A stretch of DNA of 60,983 nucleotides, filler included, from Sluysia triapertura (taxonomy: Eukaryota): the NCBI GenBank assembly GCA_046118255.1. It is 4 parts of 4 records of this genome, joined end to end, with 100 filler letters (N's around TTAATTAATTAA, not from the genome) between each part and the next. Parts side by side here need not be neighbours in the genome. Positions count along the whole stretch, not along the records: positions 30,793 to 47,856 come from JBJNIA010193160.1; 3 more parts are not named here. The stretch is one strand, 5' to 3'. Position numbers and translations under genes: made by a program. Positions 30,693 to 48,690 of the stretch are shown in pieces (within the stretch, counting starts at the first letter, position 1; every line of letters begins with the position of its first letter). Below the pieces are notes generated by a model. The model saw only the letters and a list, made by a program, of their open reading frames with translations, was not told the origin of the DNA and searched no databases.

Positions 30693-30822
30693 NNNNNNNN
30701 NNNNNNNNNNNNNNNNNNNNNNNNNNNNNNNNNNNNTTAATTAATTAANNNNNNNNNNNNNNNNNNNNNNNNNNNNNNNNNNNNNNNNNNNNTGGGCTCA
30801 CCAAATGTTAGACTTCGTAAAA

Positions 30823-30895
30823 TGGACTGACCGGGGATCGAACCCGGGACCATCGTCTGCGCAGTCCGAATGCTCTACCTCTGAGCTATCAGCCC
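30823..30895 (-). pseudogene. tRNA-like cassette (Ala-like acceptor, defective anticodon arm) inside a repeat element
   Basis: GGGCTGA/TCAGTCC-A acceptor with G3:U70, D arm GCTC-AGAGGTA-GAGC, T arm CCGGG-TTCGATC-CCCGG, then TTTT. The anticodon stem has only 3 pairs and one extra base. Confidence 0.75.
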
Positions 30896-30960
30896 CGTCT
30901 AACAATTTCAATTTTAATATATTCAATTATACTACTTGGCACTTTTTAGGTCTTTTACCC

Positions 30961-30985
30961 CAACAACAACAACAACAACAACAAC

Positions 30986-31026
<41 letters not shown>

Positions 31027-31040
31027 TAATAATAATAATG
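30961..31040 (+). repeat. (CAA)n(TAA)n tract, probable tail of the tRNA-containing element
   Basis: Begins exactly where homology with the 48540 copy ends. Confidence 0.8.
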
Positions 31041-31748
31041 ATGTAAATCATAGGATAAAAAGTTCAAATTATATTTTAAATTAATTCTTATTTAATACAT
31101 TATTTTACACATTCAATACTAGCATCGCTTATATGCAACGTACCAGTTCTTGTTTTTGAGCCCGGCGTCGCAAATGTGTGGTGTATTTACCTTATCAATT
31201 TTCGATAAAGTGTTAATAAATAATACAATTTTTTAATGACAGTTGTACATAGAAAAACACTATATAAATTGTAAATAAAGTAAAAGAGAACTAATAATTT
31301 TGGTCAATAGTTTTATTTTAAAAGTAATAATTTTGTCCATATTAAATTTCGATCATATACTTCTCGAATATTTTGGATGTCAATCAATTCGTTTGAAAAA
31401 CGTTACTTAAACCAATAATCTTGTTATTAATAGTTGCTGTTAGGTAATCCTTCTTATTCTGGATAACATTTTATCAACATTATAATTGAAAATGATTCGT
31501 TTGCAGTGAGTAAATTTATTGCTTCTCTGCATCATAAATTCTTTAATATTAAAATTTGTCATAAAGAATTTACGTTCATTATTTGTTGTATAATATGTTA
31601 CACAAAATAAATTCTTCATTACAAAATTTTTTAGAAAGCATTCAAAATTTGAGCGCAATATATTATTACTTGAATAAATTTTAAATAGGTTCAAATTATT
31701 TTAAAGATTTAGAAAATTTCGCAATTTCGTTAAAGGGTTCAAAGACTT

Positions 31749-31808
31749 TTACGAAATTTGTTTAGCACTTCCATTTTGAAGAGCAGAGACGAATATCGAA
31801 CTCAATCT
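31749..31808 (-). CDS. Same unidentified gene, probable last exon
   Basis: Acceptor aacttag, phase 0; RLSSIFVSALQNGSAKQIS then TAA. Short, so support is weaker. Confidence 0.45.
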   Translation of the reverse strand, partial: RLSSIFVSALQNGSAKQIS

Positions 31809-32277
31809 CTAAGTTAAAGCAGATATTTAATAAATTAAATTAACATAACATTATAGAAAGAATCGTAATTAAAGTAAACATACATTAGGATTTCGAAGTT
31901 AATAAAAAATCGTAGAAAGTAAACGTTAAAGATTAGCACTTATAATAGTAGTAAACGATTAACAAAATATAAATATCATCGGATTTGTTATACGAAAATA
32001 AAATTTGAGAGATTCATCAAGGAAAAGAACTTAAAAGTCTTTAAGTGTATCAGTATCGGAATAAATTTCAGTAAGAAATCAGCTAAAATTAAGAAAACAT
32101 ATGATTACTATACAATAAACATAAAACAAAAATTCTTTGCAATAATAATAGTATTAGTAACAATAATAATAATGATAATAATAATAATAAGTAATATACA
32201 CAATTTAAAAGCGATTTATCAACGAACACTAAAATATAAGCGTATATAATTTAATTTGTTATTAAAAAACGACATAC

Positions 32278-32453
32278 TTGGTTCATTTTTGATTTCTGAT
32301 TGGCTCCTGGTGAATTTATGTAATTGGGGGTAGTTGAATATGGTGATTGGAATGGTAAATTAAGTCGCAAAAATGGAGAGCATATTTCGGTCGTAGCAGG
32401 CGAAAATGGATCTCTATCAGGTTCGATACCAGACATGCATGAAACATTGGAAT
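32278..32453 (-). CDS. Same unidentified gene, exon C
   Basis: Acceptor tacttag, phase 1, matches exon B. NSNVSCMSGIEPDRDPFSPATTEICSPFLRLNLPFQSPYSTTPNYINSPGANQKSKMNQ (SP/TP-rich); donor gtatgt, phase 0. Confidence 0.65.
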
Positions 32454-33829
32454 CTAAGTAAAATAATTTCAATCTATAAATGTTAATACATTATTCAAAT
32501 TTTCAATATATAAAAATCATTAATAAAATCCTGGTATTTTAAAACCACACTACGAAATAGAATATTAATTTTGCAGAAATATGCATGTTTTATAAAAATA
32601 ATACTCAATTATAATTTTGTTTGCGTGTGTTTGGTTTCACTTGGAAATTAAGACCACAAATGGCTGGATAAATCGTAATTTTCTCGCGAGTTTTTTTTTA
32701 TTATTGTTCATAATGCATGTCAAAATCATGGGCTATTTCGTCGATACCCTTTAAAACAAACATGATAATCATAATTTTCTAACAAAAATCATAAACTTAA
32801 TCTGGTGATTACGAATATAATTAGAGACTTCGAAAAACATTTGTGTGGTATTACAAGTGCATATGATGAATTTGTAATAATAAAAATTCGACTAAATATT
32901 CAAAACATTTGACAAACGGAACATCGAAAATCCTTGTCGCAAATAGAAACATGTTTGTAATTTCATGCTTGTCGATTAAAGCTGATATGAAATCTGACAA
33001 AAGTTATGATCACATGGTAGAGTTTATTTCGTTGATCGATATTTATTTAATTAAAATTACATATTAAACTAGATTCCATTAACTGATTTCCTATTTGACA
33101 ATCCAAGAAATCACGTACTAAAAATATAATTTTAAAAATCTGTTTAAAAAACTGCAAGAAATAAAAGAATGTCTTTCAAGATCATAAAAAGGATAGAACT
33201 AATTGTAATAATGACCTTCAAAGTCGTTTTACATATTTGCTATAAAAATATAACTGTTTCTTTACTTTAATTTACTCAATTTGTATTAAATTTAAATTTT
33301 TTTTATTTGTTACCATTTCTAAATTAAGTTTTGACTTTTTTAGGTTTATAAATGTGGAGGTGACATAAAAATTGTAAATAAAGTAAATAATATAATTAAT
33401 TTCGTTTATAAATATTTTGTAAATAATATTAATAATATTAAATAATAAATAATTTGTAAATATTATCAATTAATTTTCTAATTGTTTATCAAAAATTTTA
33501 TTATTAATTTAAGTATTAAATCAAAAATTTCATTATAATTTTAGTATGCATGAAAAGCATTAATTTTTTTATGAGAATGAATCTGGTTTTATGATTTTAT
33601 ATTTTAATGACTATGAATGGTTTTATTATTTATGTTAATTTATTTTATTACTTATTTGAGGAAACAAAATATTTAGTTATTAAGTTTTAAAACCTTCTCA
33701 TTTTAATTGAAAACTAAAAAAGTTATAATTTTGGATAACAATTAATATAAAAAGACTAGATTTATAAAATATCGACACAACAAAAAGGAAGAAATCAAAA
33801 TCAAGAAAGGGATTTAATTTACTCACATT

Positions 33830-34275
33830 GATCCAGCTCTTTCTGATTTTATTTTTGGTAATCACCTCGCTGGTATAAAGTCAAGCAGAAACATTTCAAT
33901 ATTTATTTTCTAATTGCTGTTTTTCCATGAATCCGTAAGCTTTTTAATTTTAAGGTCATGCTATAATATTTAGCTGTCAAAGCAACTTAAACTCATTTTT
34001 GTTATATATATACATTGTTAATAAAGTTTTTATTTATTTCTTGTAATAAATTATTAGTAGTTGACTTTATTTGTCTAAATAGAATTAATTTAAATTTTAT
34101 AAATTGATTTAAAATAGTATTAAATAAAGAGAAAATTCTGTTTAATAATTATCAAATATAATCATACGTTCAACCCTCAAATTTTGTAAAGAAATAAGTA
34201 GTAATCTTTGATTTAAATCCTATAATTGCGTCTTCTTTACAACATAAATCGCAAATTATAGGCGGACCCTTTATA
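33830..34275. repeat. Degenerate interspersed repeat family B (copies also at about 36960-37360 and 29650-29710)
   Basis: Shared blocks CCATGAATMCGTAAGCT and TCCTRTAATTRCGTCTTC...AAATCGYAAATYAYAGGCGRACCC. Confidence 0.65.
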
Positions 34276-34660
34276 GTAATTTTATAATTGTTAAGTTTCA
34301 AGAGAGAAATACGACATAATATTTCACAATTATTTGAGTAGTCATGAGTTTATATAAGTTTAACTTAAAGGAACAGCAGATGATTTTTATTTTATATAAT
34401 AAACCCTATTGGTTTTTAATTAGTTTACAATTAGTTTTTTAGTTTTAATTCTTTTTTTGGAAGAGATGGAAAAAATGGAAACGTAAAAGTAAATTTAAGT
34501 ACTTAAAAAAATTAGTCCCAAATCCTTATAATCAGAAATAAATTAATTCTTGATGCAGTAACAAGAATAAAACAAAAATAAATAAATAAATACAAATCAA
34601 CCACTCAAAACACTTATATCATTATTCAACGTTAAGTTTAATTTAATTTAAATTATTTAA

Positions 34661-35150
34661 CCCATTACAGTCTTATTTTAATTCCATTGAATCCTCCACA
34701 GGTCCTATTTAATTCCAGCGAAAACGCAAAATTTTCACAACTAAATGCCTGACTCAAAAAACTTACTCAAACCTAATTTAAATTATTTATTTATTAATTT
34801 AATTACGTTGATGATGTATTTATGTGTTTATGTAATATTTGTATAATATAAAAAATAAAAATAATATAATATATTAATGTATATAACTATTTACTTCAAA
34901 CAGCCAAAAAACATTTTCCTCCACCACTTGACGGATTTTCTAGTAAAACCGTAGCTAGAAATTTGCACCAATGTGATTGCAAATAAAAATACGAAATGTA
35001 AACATTTTCTTATCGGACCAACTTCGACATAAAACAGATTACACAAAATTTTCAATGATTATGTTAAATCAGTGTCGGGGCTGCCTCGACAGAGGGCCTT
35101 AACGATAAAATTGTAATGTCGGAGTTGTCCCGACAGTGGACAGAAAAGGG
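34661..35150. mobile_element. piggyBac-type MITE
   Basis: TTAA|CCCATTACAGTC ... GACAGAAAAGGG|TTAA, with two subterminal 19-bp imperfect palindromes TGTCGGGGCTGCCTCGACA and TGTCGGAGTTGTCCCGACA. Confidence 0.7.
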
Positions 35151-35521
35151 TTAATGAAAGCACTTAGAGGTAATTATATCTCAAATGGGACCCATTACAT
35201 CATTAATAAATTAAAATACATTATCATTACATTACTAAAACAAAAAATTATAATTTTATAAACGAATTAAATATTGAAAGACATACTACATGTTGTACTT
35301 ACTTAAAATTTATGAAAAGGTAGAATAAATTAACGAATTTTCAGTAAACTCGGATAAAGTATATTCGTAGTAATCAATAACATTTTTGAAGTACTTTTAA
35401 GCATCAGGATAAAAATAAGACATTAAAAAGTAACATAATTAGCGAGACATTCAAAAATTAAACATGAATATTAACAAGCACGAATAAATATTAGCGAAAG
35501 TATATGTTATTATTATTATTA

Positions 35522-35565
<44 letters not shown>

Positions 35566-38298
35566 TTGCAGCGGTGAATGTAATGAAATAATAATAATAA
35601 TGGTAAAGGTAATAATATAATAAAATATGATGTAGAATAAAAAATGGGAGCTCATTTAGGGATATATGATGCTGAATTTCTTTAGCTAAGAACGATAATG
35701 GAGCAAAATTATACTTTATATAATATTCGCGTTTATATAAAAAGTTAATTGCATTTAAAAGAATAAGGGGCAAAAGTAATATTTGAGATATTATTATAAC
35801 CGTTAATTTAATGATTGCTAAGCTTACTGAAGTTTAAATTTTTAATGCATTTAAATTATACCTAAGTTTATTATTATTTTTTTTTGAGTATACATTTTGT
35901 TTTTGAAGATAAAATAATGTCGAGTAGTAATTATAGATCAAGTACATCTAGACCATCTAAGCCAAATCTAGGAAATCTACAGAAGTTCCTAGTATTAAGT
36001 TATAAGTCACATACTGTCAACAAACCTTTAAATCATAAATCATAACTTTTGTTTTTTCTCTAAGAGAAATGAATAACATTATCAATAAAAACATTATAAA
36101 CAGTGTCGAAAAAATTCTAAATGAATACAAAATGTTATATTAATTAGAAATTATATCTAATTATAAATGTAATACACCACAAATTCAAGAGATCAATTTG
36201 AATTTTATCCTGCAGTTGGCAATTCCATCTTTATCGAAATAAGACATATTCGAAAGCTTAATATGTATTTAGGAAATATATTACCTTTTTAGAAGCTTTT
36301 TAAAGTTATTGTCATAAGTAAATTTTAACAATAAAATTTAACAATAATTAATGTTGGATAACTAACAAGTTCTTCATTACCAGACGCTGGCAGTTCATTA
36401 ATGGCCAAACAGGGAACATGTAATATTTTAATAATTGATACATAGTGTAGAATAACAATTTTATTCATATTTCATAATAAAATGTGTAAAAAGTAATTTC
36501 ATTATAAATTAATTTAATAATAATTAAATAACAAGAAAATGTGTAAATAATAATTAATAATTTTATTGTAAATTAAATTTAATCTCATTTTGTAATCAAA
36601 ATTATAGAAAATTTAATAATATCGAAATTGTTTATAAATTTAAGAAAATTTTATCATTAAAAAAGAAATAAAATTAACATTTATTTATATTAGAAAACAA
36701 ATAAATCATATTTTATTTTTGTTTATAAAATAATTAAAAAAGGAAATGAAACAATTTTCGATAAAACATTAATCGTTTTCACAATTATTTCGCGTTTTGT
36801 TATCAACAATGTAGTGGAAAATTTCTAATTCAACAGTTCACGATTACTGAAGGATTTAATTTCTAATATATAATTTAATTTATATATGATTTAATTTCTA
36901 GCAGTTTCTTCAATCTCGGTTATTAAAGAATTCTTGGAAAATTATTTGATCATTTTGAACTCAGGTCCATGAATACGTAAGCTGGTTTTTATTAAGTTTT
37001 AGATTTGATCCTCAGCTATAAAATGAACGTAAAATCATTTCACTCACATCCAAACATTCGCCTGGATTAAAATCTTTTTTAAATCTTTTAAATCAGGAAA
37101 ATTAAATTATTATTTTCTTGTGGTAATAAAACTTAGTGTTTTTCGTTTGGTTAATTTATTAATTAACATATACGTAAAAGAACTTTAGGATAAGTAAATT
37201 TAGTTCGTACATTTCGCCATATAAATTTAAAATTTCGTTTTTTAAGCGAAGAGACCATTTAACGAGTAAGGATATTTTACGAAGGTTATTGTCATTTTCA
37301 TCCTGTAATTACGTCTTCCTTGAGATACAAATCGTAAATCACAGGCGAACCCGTTTATTCTTATAATTGTTGCTGCTAAAGGAAAAAAGTAGAACAATAG
37401 ATAAGTTGTGGTTTTCTTTGTACTAGACTAGTATTAGAAAATAAAATGGATTTTTCTGTTGCAAAGGTTTTAGATTTAACATTCTTTAATTCATTAACAG
37501 ATCCTTTAAACATTTACGAAGAAAATAAATTAATTTCAGTGCTATTGACGCAAATCAAATATACATGAATGTTGTTGAATTGATAACATATTTGCTTTCA
37601 TTATATTACTAATTCAAATGAAATAGGTCTATTAAATAAATGGAAAATTACATAAGTCTATTTGAATAAAATTAAAAGAAAATTAATTGCTTGTGATGTG
37701 GTAGAATATACAATAATGCATATATAAAATAACAAGTGTTAAGTAATTTGAATGAACTTATGACTTGTAATATTGTGAATTATCAAATAACACACAATAA
37801 ATGGAAAATCAAAGTAATAATTTGAATAAAAATAACATAAATACATGAGATAATAATAATACACATAACAAGAAATAATAGAGATAAAAATAACAATAAC
37901 ACGTGCAATTAGATAGTAAAATGACAATTATAGAAAGTAATATTTGTCAATAAGAACAAACAATGATTATTTGACAGTAATTTACAGTAATTTTATCATT
38001 TATTTTGTTTGAGAATTTCTGGGTTAAGTTTGTTTATGTGTGAAAGTGTTGAAAGTACAGGAAGAAATGAAAAAGTATAAATGAGTATTGTTATTGTTGT
38101 TGTTTTTGTAGTTGAAAGCTGCTATTATTTTGAGCTTAGGTTGTTGTAAATATGTAGTTAGCTGCATTTTAAGTGAGTGTAAATTTCTGAAGATTAAATA
38201 TGTCATTGTGAAACGATTCTATTTTACTAAGAATATATAAGGAAATATTTTATTACAAATTAAATATGACTAGGTTTTACAATAATCAGGAAACAAAC

Positions 38299-38482
38299 TT
38301 GTAGATTGAATTCGATATTTTTGATGATTGATGAGAGAAGGTAAATCGAGTGACAAAGATGTCTTAACTTTACTTTTCGTTTTGATTAGTTTATTTCTAG
38401 TTGCAATATCAAATTCAGTAATTTCTTCAGATTCGTTTGGAATTTTACTTCTATTGTTACTGTAAACGTCTATTAATAACTT
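38299..38482 (-). CDS. Same unidentified gene, exon B
   Basis: Acceptor tttcag, phase 0, matches exon A. KLLIDVYSNNRSKIPNESEEITEFDIATRNKLIKTKSKVKTSLSLDLPSLINHQKYRIQST; donor gtttgt, phase 1. Not in the ORF track. Confidence 0.6.
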
Positions 38483-39478
38483 CTGAAATTATTATTATTA
38501 TCATTATTGTTATTTTTGTTATTATTATTGTTGCTATCGATGAAAGAGCATTGCTCAAATTACATAATTTAAATCAAAAACAAGCACAAAGTATATTGTT
38601 AAAAAATAAATGGTAATCGTGGATAAAAATTAAATAAAAATAAAAAAGCTAATGAATAAAGAAAGGATTAGATACTTTCAAAAGACGGTCGAGATTGCAA
38701 GAATAACATGAATCCGTTTGATCTTTGCAAGATATAAATAAGCTGTGACAAATATAAAGAAATTTCCAAAGAATTTTTTATTTAATTTTCATTTATTACT
38801 TTTAAATTTGAATTTTAAAATTAAACATATTTGATGTTCTCGAACATGGAACACATTTTGTAAAATAGTAGAACACGTGGTACACGAAAGATCAAGTATA
38901 ATCAATTAGCATAATATTAAGGATATGAACAATTCAATTTTTGATACAGCTAGAAGGCAACAATTACGCAGAGATGTTTAGTTTGATAAATGACTTCTTA
39001 ATGAATCGCAATATGAAAGTTAAATTCGGCGATAACTTATCAAGATTAAAACAGTTGTAATTGATTTTTATTCTGTAATCTGTAGTAATGGATAAAGTAG
39101 TAATTGTTATTAAATGAATATGTTCATTCCACTTAAGTTTGTAAATTTAAAAAAATAGTACTAAAAATAGAATCCAGATTTGAATGTTTACTTATTTACT
39201 TATTTGTGCCTTAAAAGTTTTATATGTTCACAGCTTTTTAAACTGATTTAAGCTTTTTTGATTTTTTCAAATCGTCTAATCTTTTTGCTCTTCATTTAGC
39301 TTCTTTTTAATGGATGCTAATAATAACTTATAAATTTATCATTGTTGATTTTTCTAATTTAAATCAATATCAAAATGCATTTTTGAAGATTAACACTCTT
39401 AAACTTATAAAACTTAAATTTGAATGAAATATTTTATTATTAAAAATAAACCCTTAACTTAATATAAAAATTACATAC

Positions 39479-39792
39479 CTTTTTAATACTTATTTCACCT
39501 TCATTACTCAGTGGTCGATGCTCTTCCGATTCAGAAAAATTATATTCATCCAAGATTGATGTATTATTATTATTATTATTATTATTATTTGTGTTTGTAT
39601 TTGTATTGATGCTCAAATTAGGATTAAAACTCGAAGTAGGGTTAGTTGATGAGAATGTTGCATTCAGTGAGTTACGTTGACTATTAAAGTATCGATCACA
39701 AAGTGCTTTTTTGAAATGAATAGGAGTTGTCGAAGAAATAAGTGAAGTTTGTTGAACATCACTCGAGATAGGTTGTGACGAAGAATATGTTT
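39479..39792 (-). CDS. Unidentified Ser/Thr/Asn-rich protein, exon A (upstream exons uncertain)
   Basis: Minus-strand acceptor tttag and donor AAG|gtatgt. Open 104-codon frame ETYSSSQPISSDV...EGEISIKK including a poly-Asn run. Confidence 0.65.
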
Positions 39793-41380
39793 CTAAATTA
39801 TACAAAAATTAACTAAACTTTTATTTGAAAGATATTTTATAAAGCCCAAGATAATGGCACATATTTTAATCTATAGAGCGTAAATAAATTCGACAAATAT
39901 AAAAAACTGAATAACTTGTATTAGATCTCGTTGAAAATGATTACACTTTATAAAGTTTTATATTAATTGGTAAACTGTTTGATTACTTTTAATGTTACAA
40001 AAGTAGATGCTTATATAGAGTAATTCATTACTACTTGTTGCTTTTTAATACCTCTTTGTACAATAATTTTCCTTATTACGTGATGAATTCACTTTTCAGA
40101 CCAGAAAAAACCCATTATTTCATTAATAAAGAAAAGATACCAAAATTATTTCAAAATGAAATTATGTGAAATTCATTAATAATGAAAACTTCTTTCATAA
40201 ATTATAAAGAGATCAAAGCTTTGTATGTGTGTGTTTCAATATAATTTTCATAATTAATTTAAGAAAACATCATTCTTCCGACAAGATAGAGTTAATTCCA
40301 GAAATTCTGAATTCTTGCCTCGATTTGGGTGTGAAGATGTCTTTGAAAATACTTTATGCATAAACATATACGTGATTCATTAGATATTAAAATAAATCTG
40401 GATCTGGTCAACCAAAATTGATGTTTAGGACCGTAAAGATAAAGTAAAATTTGAATTTGATAAATTAATAAATGTGATATAACGAAAAACATATAAAATT
40501 ATGAATAGTGTTCCCCTTTAAACTCCATTGTAAACACTTCAATAGAGGACAAAGTGTTTAAATACCATCCTTGCGACATCGAAGTTGGGTGGTGATAAAA
40601 TATTCTCACTGTTTGACACAAAGAAAGGATTCAAAAATCTTAAAACATATAATTGAAAGTATTTAGTTTTTATTCCCCATTGTACTGTTTATAATACAAA
40701 AAATTCTAACGTGTTTAAAAAGTATATTAAAAAGGTGATATTTTGGTGCTTGAAAATACTTTTAATATACAGAAGGTTTTGGATCGTGTAAAATCAGTTT
40801 TTTGATGTGAATCAGAACTATTAACAATGCAGTGAAAATACGGAGTTGCTATTGTTGTTACTTCTTACGTAATTTACATGTAACAATAAGAGTAAGAGCT
40901 GAATTAAATAGGTAAGCTTTGGGTAGTTCCGTTCATAAGTCTTGAATCAACGTTAGATGGACTAGCTTGTGAGAACAGATACAACTTCTCATAGTTCTCA
41001 TTTGCAAGCGATAAACATTGAAATTCAATCACTCTCTGCATTGATTTATTAATTTTATTCTGTACAAAACTTGCTTTAGTGAAATTTTAACAAAATTATA
41101 AATTTATAATTATTGTTTATGTCTAAAATTTGAAACAAGTCATTATCATTTATATCTCTTGTACATCTTTGTATTTAAACTTAAAGTACGTTTAAAATAT
41201 ATTGTTTCTACCTTCAAAACAATTGATTAAAGACTTATTACATATTTCTTAACTAAATTAGAGTATCGTGAAGTGCTTCACCAAATTCGACAACTTGGAA
41301 TTTTTACAACCAACATTATCTAATTATGAATTTAAATTAGTGCACAATTTTTATATGACCTTTAATACTTGCATTAGTAA

Positions 41381-41783
41381 CCCTTCAGGAGAAAAACAAA
41401 AAAATTAAAACTTCATTTTATTGTAGAAATGAGTGAAATATGACATAAATTTATTAAAAGTGAAGCTTTGTATGGTAAGTTTTGAAGCATTCACCAATAC
41501 AAAGAGCAGTGTCACAATCTTTACAAGTATATAGAATATCCTTTAAACAGTACATCTTCTTTGTGGTTTTTTTACCTGGTTTAGCTGTGATATCTCTTCG
41601 ACAAAATGTCTTGATGATAGGTGCAGTGGAATGAGTGACTGTCATGGCCTTCCTAATGATATTTCGATAATATTTTTCTGATTATTTCAAGTTTTAAATC
41701 AGATAAATGAGATTTTATTATCTAAATGCAATTAAAGTGCAAAAATTCATTTAAATATATGCAAGCCGTCAAGAGTCAAAGGG
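41381..41783 (-). mobile_element. Internally deleted piggyBac element
   Basis: Cys-rich C-terminal domain C...YTCKDCDTALCIGECFKTYHT (41454-41645). Ends CCCT...AGGG flanked by degenerate TTAA (gtaa / ctaa). Confidence 0.75.
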
Positions 41784-43099
41784 CTAAGACTAACAATAGA
41801 AATATCTGTTTTTCATACTTAACTTTGTTAAAAAGAATGGTTGAAAATTCTCCGAAAAAGTTAGTCAGTAGCTGTTGGTGCTATTTCATCAGTTTTATTA
41901 AATAAACTTTGCAATGAATATTCTCAGTACAAGTAAAAAATAATGGTGCATGTTTAAATATTTGTCAAATATTTGACAAATATTTTTTGCGTTTCAATTT
42001 ATCATGATTTCGTAATTATTTGACTTAGATTGTTGTCTCTTTTCTAATTGAAGAAATCCAGCTATTTTGATCGTGAATTATTATTATTTTCTGTATATAA
42101 TATAGAATTTAATTGACAATAATAAAGTTATTTTTAGTGACTTAATCACTAAAGTTAATCTTTGATATTAAGGAAAATGTAACCGAAATTAATAATATAG
42201 ATAAATTTGACCATATGATATAGAAGGAAATTAACTAATTATAGAAAGAAATTGTTCATATTAATTAAATTACACAGAAAAATTAATCTATCATAATATA
42301 AATACAATAGAAAACAGTATATAATTAGAGTTCTTGAGAGATAATGTATATAAAATATTTTGTTAAACAACCTATTCATGTCATATTGTTGAATTAAGAC
42401 AGAAATGAAATCATTTGTCAGATCTAGATCTAAAATTAATTTTAAAAATTAACTTATAAAAAATTAATAAAAACATTAAATTAGAAGTAAAAAGTGAAGT
42501 TTACGAAAATTGCGAAATTAATAAAAAATAATTATAGAAACTAATAATAATAGTTAATAATGTAATTATTGATAGTATTAATGAAAATAATGATAATAAA
42601 GATTATTAAAGGATAAATCGCACTTCAGAAAGTCAATTAGATATCATTTATATAGTGTCTAGTAATATACTTATATAATTCTCGATTCAGTTTACGTAAT
42701 TATTTATTAATAGTTAAGGCACTATTCTATATTAACAGTAAAATAATAAATTAAGCAACATAATAATAATAATAATGATTTTAAAATTATTATTATATGG
42801 TGTGATATTGTACGATATTGGATAAAAAAATTATTTTACCTATAAATAGCTGAATGAATCAACATAATTTTGACAAATAATATTTATGAACAAGAGATAT
42901 TTTGAATTTTTAGTATTATAAATTGTTGGATTTATTAATTTTACATTTAAAAATATTTTGGCGTTTTACAATCAATTAATAACACAAAATCACTGATCAA
43001 TATATTCTGTAACAAAAATTTAGCGTTTATTTCTTTGGCGATCATTTAAGGAGTAGAAAAATATAGTTGAACAATTTATTTTCTAAAAGGTTAGTTTCT

Positions 43100-44432
43100 C
43101 TTTACTAAGTTTAATCTTTTTAAAAGATTCATCAAATTCAAACTCAAAATCGAATTTTATTTTTCAAACTTTAAAGGTTCTAAATTTGGAGTTAATAGAT
43201 GTTTAAATACTTTATTTATGCTTAGAACATATAATATATAATATATAATATATAGAATTAAATAAATTTAATTTAATTGATTTGTATTTATTTCTCATAA
43301 TTAAAAAAATGACCGAAAAGACAAACATCGAAATACTTTTATTTATCTTGAACATAAAGATTATACTAAAATTAAAAGTTATAGAGTCATTTATGATGTT
43401 GAATGAACTGTTTGCATTTGGATACTTAATAACTTTCTCCGACTGTGGATTCCTTAAATAAAAAGAATCAAAATTATATAGTTATTGATTATAAAAAATA
43501 AAAATTACTTTTGATTCAAATAGATTGAGTATTGTCCAAGAAATCAACATGATTTTTGTTAAATATCAACTCATCTTTGATTTTATCAGTTTTAATGGTC
43601 ATTACTAAATTATTGACACGTTCTAAGTGCTCATTAATAATGTTTTGATTAGCATCAATAGTGAGATATCGATTATGATTGAACGTCCAATAGTAGTAAC
43701 TGGTAGTGAAATAAGAAAATAGGATTGATTGGACGTCCAATCAAATTGACTAAGTTAATATTAATTTCAAGCTCTCTAAATAGCTGTCACCATACAGCTA
43801 AACAGGAATGACAATTGAGAAATGGTGACAGGCAATTTCAATGTAAGCAGGTAGCAACTAAAAAGATTGAACTTATGCACAAATAATCTGTCTATATTGA
43901 CAGAAATAAAATTAATAAAAATATTGATGATAATAAAAATGGTAAAAATAATTAAATAATAATATTATTATATAAAATATAAAAACGCATGAACTTTGTT
44001 CTTTTGAATTCTTTCTTTATTCTTACATGATCTTTTCTTTGAACATATAAAAATCAAATGAAATTTTATTTGAATTAAAATGCTTAGAATGGTTTTACAG
44101 TATAAATTTAATGTTTTTAAAAGGTGTTTGAAGAATTGTGAACTTAAAATGTTTTAGATTAATTTTGAATTGTATGTTTGGTAATTTGAGATGTAAACTG
44201 TGATTCTAATGTTGGTAAATTATGAATTAAGAATGTTTTAAATGAAATTTAAAATGTACATTAATGGTTTGAATATAAGTATATTTTAATGTAAAGTTGT
44301 AAATTTAAAATGTTTTGAAATGTGAAAAGGTTTTAGTGGATCTGAGAAAGTAAAATATAAAATGTTAGTAAATGTGATATTACAAATAAAATAATTATTT
44401 TGAATTTATAAGTTAAAAGATTGGCCACCACA
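43100..44432 (-). mobile_element. LTR-retroelement relic (LTR-like part about 43870-44432, decayed internal ORF)
   Basis: Minus strand starts TGTGGTGGCCAA, similar to the terminus at about 22898-22912. Strong G/T skew in both regions; residual ORF 43516-43740. Confidence 0.4.
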
Positions 44433-44919
44433 CTAAAATATATTTATAAAGACAATCTTAATATTTCAAAAAATGTTTCTTTCACGATGAACTAGATACT
44501 AAAGTAAATGTTAATTATGATGATTTAAAAACTAAAGTAATTAGTTATTTTTATCTAAATGTTAAAGTTAATATTAGTTAATATGATTTAAAAGCTAAAG
44601 CAAACATTTATGAACTAAGGTCCCATGATGATGCACATACAAATACAAACAATCATAATCAAATTCAGACGATGTCGAATCGTAAAATCAACTTAGATGG
44701 TGATATACTAATTGCTATTAAGAACAAATTCAATCCGATCTTTACTTTATTCAAGTATGTATTTTTTGTGACTTACCAAATTTTTGTCTTATTGAGATAA
44801 AGTACATTTTATTATTGTACATAGAATTTAGCCGCATGGGCGTATGCTTTAAATAGTAATTTTGATGAGAATGATTGTATATATTATCTATGGTTTGCAA
44901 AATCATACTATAATAACAG

Positions 44920-46243
44920 TAAATAGCGGGATTCAGAAATTATGGACAGTACCGAAACCGAAAAATCAAATATCGGCACTGAAATCTGTTGGTGGCTCAA
45001 TATCTGGATTACACAAACATGCGATCAATCTTGAGGTTGAATCAAGGGGTCCTTCAAGTAAAAAACAAAAAACTTTAGAACAATTGATCAAAAAATCTGC
45101 CAATGAAGTTATAGCCGAATTGTTTGCAAAGATGGTTTAAATTTTCGGCAAATTTCTTGCAATGAGTTCATTCAAAATAATTTGATGACAAATGTATGCG
45201 ACAAAAACTCTCCAACTTCTGTAAATGGCGTGAAAAATTCAATGCTTAACTTTTATGATATAAACAAACTGAATTAACAGAATATTTTTCTAATCGTTAT
45301 TCAATTTCGCTGGATGAGTATACATCATCCCAGAATATTCGGTTTATGAATATTAATGTTCATGATATGAATAAGCACTGGTCTCTTGGTTTAGTTCACT
45401 TTCGTAAGTCATTCAAAAGTTATAGAATCACATATTATGCGAGAGATAGATTAAGTGAATTTGGATTGAATTTAAATTGCCATATCGTCGGAACAACATC
45501 CGATGGCAAGGAAAACAAATTTGTTCATCAACTCTGTTAAGCCCATTGAATTCATTTAACAGCATGCTATGTTTTGTACAAAGGAAAAAAACATGAAGAT
45601 GATGAAAAATGCACTTTGAAAGATAATCAAGAAAGTATTGAAGACTGGGATAGATTGTAATTCATTAATGAAGCTTTTTGTGAAATAAAAGTTAGAAGAA
45701 TATGCAAAGTTTGCAGAAATAGCCATTGAAAAGCGACTATTTGCAAGAAATATTTAAGAATGAATCAAAGGAAAAGAACTCAAACTTATATTAGTCACTT
45801 CCACAAGATGGAATAGTATTATTATAATGATTTCTGAGCATTTAGAAAAGCTAAACCGAAGCCTGTGCACAATTAAAGCAACAAGTGTAGAATCTGAAAG
45901 ATTCGTTCTCGGTCATCGCCCAAAAACACTAGATGTTTTGACCTAGTCATACTTTGCAAATATTGAGAAATAAAGAACTTCTGAAAAACTGTAATTCTTT
46001 AAAGAGGCGAAAAATACATTTTAAATACTAAATATAACATTTGTATAAGTCTTAGTCTTATTACTACATTTAAGTTCGTTTATTTACCTAAAAAGTATAT
46101 AGTGTGTATAACAGAAAATAATATATGCAAAAGTACAGTGGGCACTTTTTTGATAAAGGTGCTCGAAATCTGTAAAAAACCGGGATTGAATATTTCTGGA
46201 GGTAATTTACCGAGTATAAAATTTTCGATATTTTCTAACCCTA
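44920..46243 (+). mobile_element. Decayed hAT transposon (hobo/Ac-like transposase pseudogene with right end)
   Basis: Broken frames read RYSISLDEYTS, HIVGTTSDG, QLC*AH*IHL, TRWNS and ATSVESER. Subterminal CGGGATT motifs; probable terminus AACCCTA at 46237-46243. Confidence 0.8.
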
Positions 46244-46605
46244 ATGTTGTCCCTGTCATTACTTTTAAATTCTAGCTTTAATATAGAAAGGTACTTAAGG
46301 CACCTGGCTTTTATTTTAAAATTAAGATCTATATAACAAGGATAAACATTAATTTGAACAAAACAAATTAAAGATCAATAAATTTATAGCACTCATCGTA
46401 ATGAGTAAAAATTTGTTTACATAACATGGAAAATCCTATGAACACCATCGAAGAGAATATACAGGTTATATTAGACTTTCTATTAATTTATACAATATTT
46501 TTTTGGTTACCGTTGTCCATTCGGCAAGTTCACAAAATTCACCGCGGTCTACGCTCTTCTCGAGTGCTTTTCCATGAAATTTTTTTTTAATTCATACAAT
46601 AGGCT

Positions 46606-46879
46606 CTGACTGAGTTTCGATACTTGAAACAATCTACATATACATAGCTTCAGAATCCAACGTGCTTATTTGGGTCTTACAAACTTCATTCACCCTGATA
46701 AAATTCTTTGTAAAATCAACAACATAACGTTTTTTAATTCATTCAATATGCTCCGATTGAGTTTCGCATACTTGAAATAATCTAAATAATCTTTCAACTA
46801 CATAGCTTCAAAATTCAGCTCATCCACCTGGACCTCCAAAGCTTCATTCACTTTTGCAAAATTCCTCTTGAAGTCAAAA
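46606..46879 (-). repeat. Degenerate tandem duplication (about 150-bp period) of former coding sequence
   Basis: TGAGTTTCG..ATACTTGAAA.AATCTA...TACATAGCTTCA.AAT...CTTCATTCAC...AAAATTC occurs twice. Confidence 0.7.
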
Positions 46880-47180
46880 CTTCACGTACGCGAATAGATT
46901 GCTTATTTATTCAATTTGTCATCATCCATAAACATAAATTGTTGTAAAAATATCAATTTAGTAAACTCAACAATATAGTGTTCAAAAATTAATAAAAGAT
47001 ATACATGGATTGTTGGCAGAATTTTCATAAAACTAAATTTTGTTTGGTAATAATAAGTTGTTAAATTTATTGCAGTTTATTTACACATGCATCTTAAAAC
47101 AAATTGTAGTACATAATTTTTTAATAAGTTTTGTAATGACAAATATTTCATAAACAAAATATAATTTGTTATTCACTTAC

Positions 47181-47241
47181 GTCATTACCTTCCATAATTA
47201 ATGCTTGACCTTCAATTACATAGTAATTATGATAGTAATAA
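47181..47241 (-). CDS. Candidate small exon (YYYHNYYVIEGQALIMEGND)
   Basis: Strong splice signals ttttacag ... gtaagt around a 61-nt segment open in one frame. Gene membership unclear. Confidence 0.35.
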
Positions 47242-47788
47242 CTGTAAAACTATGGTAATTATAAATTATGACTGTGTTTATGTTTGAATGTATTAAGTAA
47301 TCTGTTTAGTAATTTGTTTATGCATGAAGCATGATGAAATATGTTTGTGATTGCGACGAGTTGATTCAGAGTTCACTATAGTTATAAAGTAAAAAGTATT
47401 TATTGAAATCATACTGTATGATCTGTATTTAGTTTCAAAATTTATTGCTGAAATGTGGAAAAATTTTTACAATAAAATCTTCTAACTTCATTATTTATTT
47501 TTTTACTTTTAAAATTAACGAAATTAAAATTTTGAAAGATCAACTAAGAACATAAAAATGAACTAAAAAGAACATGATGTGAACAAAATATTTGTGAATA
47601 AAATTAACATGGCCACCTCTTGATCAACAAGACTATTGTAACTAAGTCATGATATAACATTAAAATTAACTTTGTTTTTGTAAATATATAATTAATGTAA
47701 TTAATTATGTAAATGTATTATTAAATGTAATTAATGTATTATATAAATATATTTTTTAGAAAAGTATTTTAAAAAAGTTAATAAATAT

Positions 47789-47856
<68 letters not shown>

Positions 47857-48539: not shown

Positions 48540-48690
48540 TTGTTGGGTTACAGGCCTAAAGTGCCTTAGAGTAATGATAGTATAATTGACTATAATAAAT
48601 TGAAATTGTTAGACGGGGCTGATATCTTAGTGGTCAGATCATCGATCTACACATCTATGAAGCGAGAGGTGCCGGGTTGGATTCCCGACT
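48540..48690 (+). mobile_element. Second, more degenerate copy of the tRNA-containing element
   Basis: Shares TGTTGGGT...CCTAAA..GTGCC...TAGTATAATTGA...AAATTGAAATTGTTAGACGGGGCTGATA with the reverse complement of 30888-30965. Decayed A and B boxes at 48616-48690. Confidence 0.75.

What the first reader, a model, noticed from the sequence alone, without database searches (positions are those of the whole stretch)
30793..30990. Repeat element built around a tRNA-like cassette with LTR-like ends, PBS-like motif and (CAA)n tail
Seen: a 99-bp unit (30806-30904) bounded by a perfect inverted repeat TGTTAGAC...GTCTAACA (TG...CA) is filled almost entirely by a minus-strand tRNA-like sequence with intact A/B boxes and TTTT. 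On that strand the unit is followed by TT-TGGTGAGCCCA, the complement of a mature tRNA 3' end (TGGGCTCA-CCA). On the other side are about 55 bp plus a (CAA)n tract, shared with a second copy at 48540-48690. Established: TG..CA ends followed by a TGG-starting PBS mark LTR elements; plant Cassandra TRIMs carry a Pol III (5S) gene in their LTRs; simple-repeat tails such as (CAA)n mark LINE-mobilised SINEs. Inference: either a Cassandra-analogous mini-LTR element driven by a tRNA promoter, or a SINE whose sense tRNA head (ending ..CACCA, lost in the gap) is followed by an inverted second tRNA clamped by an 8-bp stem. I do not recognise either as a described family, but cannot search.
Basis: partly seen in the sequence, partly recalled or inferred. 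Interest (0 to 1): 0.8.

Follow-up and report, generated by a model that had tools for sequence, protein, structure and literature searches.

The report
tRNA-bearing mini-LTR-like high-copy repeat
The tRNA look-alike at the contig edge is one copy of a very abundant mobile repeat, and its layout best fits the terminal repeat of a small LTR retrotransposon carrying a tRNA-derived promoter, a kind first described in 2024 (Helenus), rather than a classical SINE or a working tRNA gene.

Summary
A minus-strand tRNA-like sequence lies at 30823-30895 (Rfam tRNA 47.9 bits). It is followed by TTTT, clamped by a perfect 8-bp inverted repeat, and followed by TT-TGGTGAGCCCA at the contig edge.

It is not a working tRNA. 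The anticodon stem forms 3 of 5 pairs, position 37 is C, the anticodon reads Arg-GCG, and the body looks like tRNA-Cys.

It is a high-copy repeat. 10,087 contigs of one public run of the same or a close organism align to 30793-30962. The repeat has a sharp edge at 30806 and stays shared to about 30940-30960.

On the tRNA-sense strand the unit reads: TGTTG/(TTG)n, a 67-nt leader with TATA-like motifs, the tRNA-like part, TTTT, then 13 nt ending ..TCTAACA. This is the layout of published Helenus LTRs (Kojima 2024, TRIMp3). The TGG-starting motif after the unit carries about 6-14% of the peak summed depth, as a 5'-LTR/primer-binding-site junction among many solo LTRs would.

A canonical SINE fits poorly, because the head is not at the 5' end and (CAA)n lies on the wrong side. 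Paired LTRs, a polypurine tract and target-site duplications could not be tested.

Verdict: probably a new member of a known kind (confidence about 0.5). Interest is moderate.

The parts
30793..30805 (-). PBS-like motif after the unit. On the minus strand it reads TT + TGGTGAGCCCA and is cut off by the contig edge.
   Evidence: Sequence. Summed depth here is only 6-14% of the peak, so a minority of copies share it. Helenus internal regions start the same way, with (T)(T)TGG. It matches 9/11 to the Trp-type PBS of Helenus-2_SyJa (ttggtgaccccgac). The 8-mer TGAGCCCA also occurs in the fungal iMet-type PBS ggttatgagccca.
30806..30818 (-). 13-nt tail of the unit (U5-like), ACGAAGTCTAACA, ending in ..CA. 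It contains inverted-repeat arm 30806-30813.
   Evidence: The repeat edge at 30806 is sharp: 283 contigs run from there into unrelated AT-rich flanks. 'tctaaca' is the 3' end of 17 deposited Helenus LTRs.
30819..30822 (-). T4 run directly after the tRNA-like part (Pol III terminator-like).
   Evidence: Sequence. The published Helenus LTRs seen also carry T-runs just after the tRNA-like part.
30823..30895 (-). tRNA-like sequence with A and B boxes. It appears tRNA-Cys-derived and is not a functional tRNA.
   Evidence: ARAGORN calls Arg-GCG; Rfam tRNA 47.9 bits. The anticodon stem has 3/5 pairs and position 37 is C (read). The D arm and 5' anticodon stem of the family consensus equal a crab tRF-Cys-GCA.
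30896..30962 (-). 67-nt conserved leader upstream of the tRNA-like part (U3-like). It contains inverted-repeat arm 30897-30904 and TATA motifs at -26 and -36.
   Evidence: Summed depth stays at 1.85-2.2 million to about 30936, then falls.
30961..31041 (.). (CAA)9 then (TAA)n microsatellite at the leader end of the unit. On the tRNA-sense strand it reads (TTA)n(TTG)9 and may be an expansion of a TGTTG LTR start.
   Evidence: Sequence. One sister contig has only ACAACAC at this place, so on the sense strand it reads ..GAAG-TGTTGTGGTAAAAG (table 5c). Whether the tract belongs to the family was not testable.

Best explanation
The stretch is one long terminal repeat (LTR) of a small non-autonomous LTR retrotransposon whose LTR carries a tRNA-derived RNA polymerase III gene unit. 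This is a Helenus-type TRIM ('TRIMp3').

Read on the minus (tRNA-sense) strand, the LTR has these parts:
- It starts in TGTTG, expanded here into (TTG)9.
- A 67-nt U3-like leader follows, with TATA-like motifs at -26 and -36.
- Then comes a 73-nt tRNA-Cys-derived sequence with A and B boxes.
- Then a T4 run.
- Then a 13-nt U5-like tail ending ..TCTAACA at 30806.

The next bases, TT-TGGTGAGCCCA, would be the start of the primer-binding site. That makes this copy a 5' LTR whose internal part lies beyond the contig edge.

Inferred mechanism (not shown). Pol III, or read-through transcription, starts at the tRNA-like promoter of the 5' LTR and leaks past the weak T4. It ends at the T4 of the 3' LTR, so the tRNA-like part serves as R. 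Reverse transcriptase and integrase of an autonomous LTR element copy and insert the RNA. LTR-LTR recombination leaves mostly solo LTRs. The 8-bp inverted repeat may be the TG..CA termini of a shorter 99-bp LTR variant. It may also be a U5-U3 pairing that helps strand transfer, as the 5'-3' pairing in Ty1 RNA does; that comparison is from my own knowledge.
For: Shown:
- High-copy dispersed repeat: 10,087 contigs aligned, spread from above 99% to below 90% identity.
- The repeat edge is sharp and falls exactly at the ..AACA end (30806). There, 283 contigs continue into non-consensus AT-rich flanks.
- One contig shows a short variant starting exactly at TG of TGTTAGAC (30904), preceded by the purine-rich AAAATAAGAAC (table 5c).
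- The 67-nt leader upstream of the tRNA-like part is as abundant as the core. A Pol III retrocopy would not carry it.
- The TGG-starting motif keeps 6-14% of the peak summed depth. Unique flanks of about 17x could not give that, so it is itself repeated. This fits 5'-LTR/PBS junctions among many solo LTRs.
- One sister contig reads, on the sense strand, unit - TTTGG - ATAATCGCTG - AAAAATTAGAAAATAGAAG - TGTTGTGGTAAAAG.. That is a purine run abutting a TGTTG unit start (table 5c).

Comparison with published Helenus (PMC10886601):
- The LTRs run TGT.., leader, tRNA-like with A/B boxes, T-run, short tail ..ACA.
- Fungal LTRs start TGTTG and end TCTAACA, 17 times in the deposited file.
- One ends ..tctccattttacagtctctaca, against ..gtccattttacgaagtctaaca here.
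- Internal parts start (T)(T)TGG.
- The tRNA-like parts usually show disagreement between anticodon and isotype, as here: Arg-GCG anticodon on a Cys-like body.
Against: - No second LTR, polypurine tract or target-site duplication can be seen in the window. The copy sits 13 nt from the contig edge, and there is no other copy in the 17-kb piece.
- Only 11 nt of the supposed PBS are visible, and they match no tRNA end exactly. The best match is 9/11 to a Trp-type PBS. The host's own tRNAs are unknown.
- The supporting LTR-internal-LTR contigs are single contigs with internal parts of only 11-40 nt. They could be neighbouring insertions.
- There is no sequence match to any deposited Helenus consensus.
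- The apparent abundance (10^4-10^5 by summed depth, which the tool warns is not a copy number) exceeds the largest reported Helenus family, 5,575 LTRs. It is more typical of SINEs.
- The 5' TG start is buried in a microsatellite and is not defined in this copy.
Confidence: 0.5

Rival explanations
1. A non-LTR, LINE-mobilised short retroposon (SINE-like). Its RNA would be the plus strand, starting at TGTTAGAC (30806) and ending in a (CAA)n/(TAA)n tail, with the tRNA-like part carried in antisense. Alternatively, an atypical tRNA-derived SINE with extra flanks.
For: - Very high copy number with a graded divergence spectrum, as in SINE families.
- One sharply defined end (30806), with similarity decaying towards the end that carries a simple-repeat tract.
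- Triplet-repeat tails are known in arthropod SINEs and short LINE-derived elements; this is from my own knowledge and was not checked.
- The A and B box regions are the best conserved parts.
Against: - In the orientation that puts (CAA)n at the 3' end, the Pol III promoter is antisense. The plus strand also has T4/T5 runs before the tail, so Pol III could not make that RNA.
- In the tRNA-sense orientation, the head is preceded by a conserved 67-nt leader. It is followed by TTTT plus only 13 nt, with no body or tail.
- A repeated TGG-starting extension beyond the sharp end is not expected for host flanks.
Confidence: 0.2
2. The unit is the LTR of a larger, possibly autonomous, LTR retrotransposon, or only its solo LTRs. 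The tRNA-like part would be a captured SINE or tRNA fragment in U3/R, and the element would not be a miniature TRIM.
For: All the LTR-type features listed for the best explanation apply here too. The length of the internal part is unknown because the contig ends 13 nt after the unit.
Against: - A 157-bp LTR with a Pol III-type promoter and a T4 run is ill-suited to producing a multi-kb genomic RNA; Kojima argues the same for TRIMp3.
- The only unit-to-unit contigs seen have very short spacers.
- No gag or pol relics lie next to the copy in the piece. The piggyBac-type zinc-finger relic about 10 kb away is unrelated.
Confidence: 0.12
3. A composite repeat spread by a DNA-level mechanism, such as a MITE or other cut-and-paste element, a Helitron-type element, or segmental or tandem amplification, that happens to carry a tRNA pseudogene with its flanks.
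For: - The unit carries a whole gene-like cassette, with upstream TATA, tRNA-like part and terminator, as DNA-level copying would preserve.
- It has an 8-bp perfect inverted repeat.
- Some contigs show units close together.
Against: - The outer ends share only TGTT/AACA, so there is no long terminal inverted repeat.
- The ends do not fit Helitron TC..CTRR termini.
- The flanks of hundreds of copies are unrelated, so this is not a tandem array.
Confidence: 0.1
4. An ordinary functional tRNA gene (Arg-GCG or Cys) with a chance inverted repeat in its flanks.
For: - ARAGORN and Rfam both call a tRNA.
- A box, B box and T4 terminator are in place.
Against: - The anticodon stem has 3/5 pairs, position 37 is C, and the Arg anticodon sits on a Cys-like body.
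- The Rfam score is modest.
- 10,087 contigs carry the unit together with its flanks.
- The inverted repeat is not a chance feature.
Confidence: 0.03

Closest known systems
[quoted passage not shown]
   Same: - The tRNA-derived sequence has conserved A and B boxes and is unlikely to be a working tRNA (anticodon and isotype disagree).
- It sits towards the 3' part of a short repeat unit that has a leader upstream, a T-run just after it and a short tail ending ..ACA.
- The unit is followed by (T)(T)TGG.
- The fungal members' TGTTG start and TCTAACA end recur here.

   Different: - No sequence match to any deposited consensus.
- The tRNA-like part is Cys-like, whereas the paper's figures align Helenus parts to Thr, Lys and Val tRNAs.
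- The unit is shorter: about 157 bp, with a possible 99-bp variant.
- Apparent abundance is far higher than the reported 5,575 LTRs.
- Paired LTRs, polypurine tract and duplications were not observed here.
- The host genome is extremely AT-rich (about 24% GC) and of unknown taxon.
Cassandra TRIMs of plants (5S rRNA-derived Pol III promoter in the LTRs)
   Same: The same idea: a small-RNA gene with a Pol III promoter and terminator inside each LTR of a miniature LTR element.
   Different: The captured gene is 5S rRNA, not a tRNA. Cassandra is restricted to plants, and there is no sequence relation.
tRNA-derived SINEs (SINE2)
   Same: A tRNA-derived A/B-box promoter, short length, very high dispersed copy number, and subfamilies that differ in the anticodon region.
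   Different: The tRNA-like part is not at the 5' end of the unit. No body or tail follows it in the sense orientation, and the simple repeat lies upstream of the head.

Membership tests
Helenus / TRIMp3 | tRNA-derived sequence with A and B boxes inside the repeat unit (LTR) | tested here: met
   Rfam tRNA 47.9 bits and an ARAGORN call at 30823-30895(-). The unit, including this part, is repeated in 10,087 contigs.
Helenus / TRIMp3 | LTR termini 5'-TG...CA-3' | tested here: inconclusive
   The 3' end is met: the sharp repeat edge at 30806 gives ..TCTAACA. The 5' TG is plausible as TGTTG inside (TTG)9, and one sister contig has TGTTGTGG. It is not defined in this copy.
Helenus / TRIMp3 | Two LTRs in direct orientation around a short internal part | not testable with these tools
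   The contig ends 13 nt after the unit and the piece holds no second copy. Only three single contigs show unit-spacer-unit, with spacers of 11-40 nt.
Helenus / TRIMp3 | Primer-binding site just downstream of the 5' LTR, complementary to a tRNA | tested here: inconclusive
   TT-TGGTGAGCCCA has the right place and format and is itself repeated (6-14% of peak depth). It matches 9/11 to the Trp-type PBS ttggtgaccccg of Helenus-2_SyJa. It also shares TGAGCCCA with the fungal iMet-type PBS. The host tRNAs are unknown and only 11 nt are visible.
Helenus / TRIMp3 | Polypurine tract just upstream of the 3' LTR | not testable with these tools
   No 3' LTR is in the window. In single contigs, AAAAATTAGAAAATAGAAG and AAAATAAGAAC abut unit starts (table 5c).
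Helenus / TRIMp3 | 4-bp (animal) or 5-bp (fungal, plant) target-site duplications | not testable with these tools
   One end lies beyond the contig edge, and the other is blurred by the microsatellite.
tRNA-derived SINE (SINE2) | tRNA-related head with an internal Pol III promoter at the 5' end of the element, in sense | tested here: not met
   A conserved 67-nt leader precedes the tRNA-like part in sense. Relative to the (CAA)n end, the tRNA-like part is antisense.
tRNA-derived SINE (SINE2) | Body and an A-rich or simple-repeat tail 3' of the head | tested here: not met
   In sense, the unit ends 17 nt after the tRNA-like part, at a sharp edge with unrelated flanks. (CAA)n lies upstream.
tRNA-derived SINE (SINE2) | High-copy dispersed repeat with variable-length target-site duplications | tested here: inconclusive
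   High copy number and dispersed flanks are shown. Duplications are not testable.
Cassandra | 5S rRNA-derived sequence in the LTR | tested here: not met
   The only Rfam match in the unit is tRNA.
Functional tRNA gene | Intact cloverleaf with a 5-bp anticodon stem, purine at position 37, and anticodon agreeing with the body | tested here: not met
   The stem has 3/5 pairs and position 37 is C. The anticodon is Arg-GCG, but the D arm and 5' anticodon stem are those of tRNA-Cys-GCA.

The most novel reading that the evidence does not exclude
A Helenus-like TRIM that has reached SINE-like abundance (10^4-10^5 units) in an extremely AT-rich genome, outside the taxa where Helenus has been reported. 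Its LTR would be one of the shortest known: about 157 bp, with a 99-bp variant that is little more than a tRNA-Cys-derived Pol III gene between 8-bp TG..CA inverted termini. In that element the tRNA-like part itself would serve as the R region, and the 8-bp repeat would pair U5 with U3 in the RNA.
Probability: 0.2. Interest if true: 0.6.

Novelty: new member of a known kind. Interest (0 to 1): 0.4.

Why it matters
If confirmed, this family would extend TRIMp3 elements to a new host. It would also show that an LTR-type element with a Pol III promoter can reach copy numbers usually reserved for SINEs. It would be a compact natural case for asking how Pol III transcription, a weak T4 terminator and LTR reverse transcription fit together.

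There is a practical point too. Units like this inflate tRNA gene counts (here as 'tRNA-Arg-GCG') and break assemblies. This contig ends inside one.

Tried and rejected
- Getting more copies. A word-based protein search with the ORF that crosses the unit found nothing. Exact 22-mers from the best conserved part are absent from viral, metagenome and prokaryote genome contigs. A look-up of a window ORF to find the source record found nothing. I skipped the large profile search, because the blank word search made it pointless.
- Other copies inside the piece. blastn-short and nhmmer found none.
- Other organisms among the listed runs. Runs X2, X3 and X23 (10% word share) showed no depth once the microsatellite was left out. 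Their share therefore most likely came from (CAA)n/(AAT)n words.
- Ciliate genetic code as the reason for so few ORFs. With TGA as the only stop, long ORFs appear in all six frames, so this says nothing.
- Helitron and MITE readings. The termini do not fit.
- Matching the PBS-like motif to a tRNA. The best match is 9/11 to a Trp-type PBS. A first impression of 10/11 came from a letter lost in the PDF-derived text of Figure S2; the FASTA file corrected it.
- Literature search by sequence. Nothing matched the T arm and acceptor. Only the Cys-type 5' half matched.
- Sequence beyond the contig edge.

Full report
**What is in the sequence**

The piece (30793-47856) has about 24% GC. It has almost no long ORFs and is full of (AAT)n and (CAA)n tracts.

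At its left edge, ARAGORN and Rfam both find one tRNA-like sequence on the minus strand, at 30823-30895. The Rfam score is 47.9 bits against a threshold of 29.

Read on that strand, the order is:
- (TTA)n(TTG)9;
- a 67-nt leader, GGGGTAAAAG...TGTTAGACG, with TATA at -36 and -26;
- the tRNA-like part;
- TTTT;
- ACGAAGTCTAACA;
- TT-TGGTGAGCCCA, where the contig ends.

The 8-bp inverted repeat TGTTAGAC/GTCTAACA is perfect. It folds as a stem under the acceptor stem. It is not a chance feature of this AT-rich DNA: 0 of 200,000 natural flank pairs gave an inverted repeat of 8 bp or more with at least 3 G/C, and the 8-mer occurs nowhere else in the piece.

**It is not a working tRNA**

With anticodon GCG at position 34, the anticodon stem forms only 3 of 5 pairs and position 37 is C (read).

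The D arm and the 5' strand of the anticodon stem of the family consensus were recovered from the loose ends. They are identical to the 5' half of a crab tRNA-Cys-GCA fragment printed in PMC13700734. The element is therefore Cys-derived with a scrambled anticodon loop.

An Arg anticodon on a Cys-like body is the kind of isotype disagreement that Kojima reports for most Helenus tRNA-like parts.

**It is a very abundant repeat**

I laid the contigs of the one public run that holds this locus (X1, coded organism A, 55% of the sampled words) on 30793-30962 at 80% likeness. This gave 10,087 contigs: 1,859 at 99% or better, 3,662 at 95-99%, 3,533 at 90-95% and 1,033 below 90%.

Summed word depth peaks at about 3.0 million, against about 15-20 for single contigs. 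The tool warns that this is not a copy number. As an order of magnitude it suggests 10^4-10^5 units. One copy in a 17-kb piece fits the lower part of that range better.

The profile defines the unit as follows.
- Depth rises steeply at 30805/30806, where 283 contigs continue into AT-rich flanks with no consensus.
- Depth stays at 1.85-2.2 million across the '55 bp' to about 30936, then decays to 30960.
- It dips over the anticodon region (30853-30882), where subfamilies differ.
- No common variant falls in either inverted-repeat arm.
- This copy has private changes at 30880 and 30911.

**Which kind of element**

A classical tRNA-derived SINE does not fit in either orientation.
- In the tRNA-sense orientation, the 'head' is preceded by a conserved 67-nt leader. 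It is followed by a terminator and only 13 nt.
- In the orientation that puts (CAA)n at the 3' end, the promoter is antisense. T4/T5 runs also precede the tail.

By contrast, every feature fits an LTR.
- The sharp edge falls exactly at ..AACA.
- One contig shows a short variant beginning exactly at the TG of TGTTAGAC, after the purine-rich AAAATAAGAAC.
- One sister contig reads, on the sense strand, unit-TTTGG-ATAATCGCTG-AAAAATTAGAAAATAGAAG-TGTTGTGGTAAAAG... This is a purine run abutting a TGTTG start of the next unit. It suggests that (TTG)9 in our copy is an expansion of the LTR's TGTTG start (table 5c).
- The TGG-starting motif after the unit keeps 6-14% of the peak summed depth. That is far more than unique flanks could give, so the junction is itself repeated thousands of times, yet only in a minority of units. 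This is what 5'-LTR/PBS junctions look like in a family dominated by solo LTRs. Reported LTR-to-internal ratios are 2:1 to 7:1.

**Comparison with what is known**

One was described in 2024. Helenus elements are TRIMs with a tRNA-like sequence in their LTRs. With Ajax and Cassandra they are grouped as TRIMp3 (PMC10886601).

The deposited consensus sequences show the same layout as our unit: TGT.., leader, tRNA-like part, T-run, short tail ..ACA. Their internal parts begin (T)(T)TGG.

The fungal members match in further details.
- They start TGTTG and end TCTAACA. The string 'tctaaca' occurs 17 times in the file, and in the passages shown it ends LTR consensi.
- One LTR ends ..tctccattttacagtctctaca, against ..gtccattttacgaagtctaaca here.
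- Their commonest PBS, ggttatgagccca.., contains the 8-mer TGAGCCCA seen in our motif.

As a 3'-end PBS, our 11 nt match the Trp-type PBS of Helenus-2_SyJa at 9/11. The Figure S2 text drops a letter in several rows, so I relied on the FASTA file. No deposited consensus matches our unit in sequence.

**What is shown and what is inferred**

Shown:
- the anatomy of the copy;
- the defective tRNA;
- the high copy number;
- the unit's boundaries;
- that a minority of copies share the TGG motif;
- the parallel with published Helenus LTRs.

Inferred:
- that units occur as LTR pairs with a PBS and a polypurine tract;
- Pol III transcription from the tRNA-like promoter, with leak-through of the T4 run so that the tRNA-like part acts as R;
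- mobilisation in trans by an autonomous LTR element;
- a role for the 8-bp repeat, either as termini of a 99-bp LTR variant or as a U5-U3 pairing.

Not testable here: a second LTR, target-site duplications, the host's tRNAs and the host's identity.

**Verdict**

It is most likely (about 0.5) an LTR of a Helenus-type TRIM. That makes it a new member of a known kind, with unusual abundance and compactness. A non-canonical LINE-dependent retroposon (0.2), an LTR of a larger element (0.12) and a DNA-level composite repeat (0.1) remain open.

Noticed in passing
window 41457-41645 (-): A 63-aa ORF ends in a Cys-rich C..C..C..CF..YH motif. It gives a sub-threshold Pfam hit to zf-Tnp_2, the piggyBac-type transposase zinc finger (E 8.6e-4, 20.2 bits against a cut-off of 24). 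No transposase body is recognisable upstream. It is probably a decayed piggyBac relic.
   Followed up: partly
window 45259-45537 (+): A stop-free 93-aa stretch (..ISLDEYTSSQNIRFMNINVH..HIVGTTSDG..) looks by eye like the central part of hAT transposases. Pfam gives no supporting hit, so this is unverified.
   Followed up: partly
window 35507-35567, 47780-47856 and 30961-31041: Long (AAT)n/(ATT)n tracts recur, and the piece ends in one at 47856. Both ends of this contig therefore lie in repeats, which probably explains where the assembly broke.
   Followed up: no
window 44002-44026 (+): A sub-threshold Rfam hit to CRISPR-DR27 (28.4 bits against 35, E 0.51) lies in 20% GC DNA. I treat it as chance.
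   Followed up: no
window 39443-39808 (-): This is the longest stop-free stretch of the piece (122 aa). It is Ser/Thr/Asn-rich with an N9 run and has no Pfam family. It is unclear whether it is an exon or noise.
   Followed up: partly
window 30853-30882: Family copies differ most in the anticodon arm. The palindrome CTGCGCAG is common there, and this copy carries a different version (loose ends). This suggests subfamilies that keep the A and B boxes but not the anticodon arm.
   Followed up: partly
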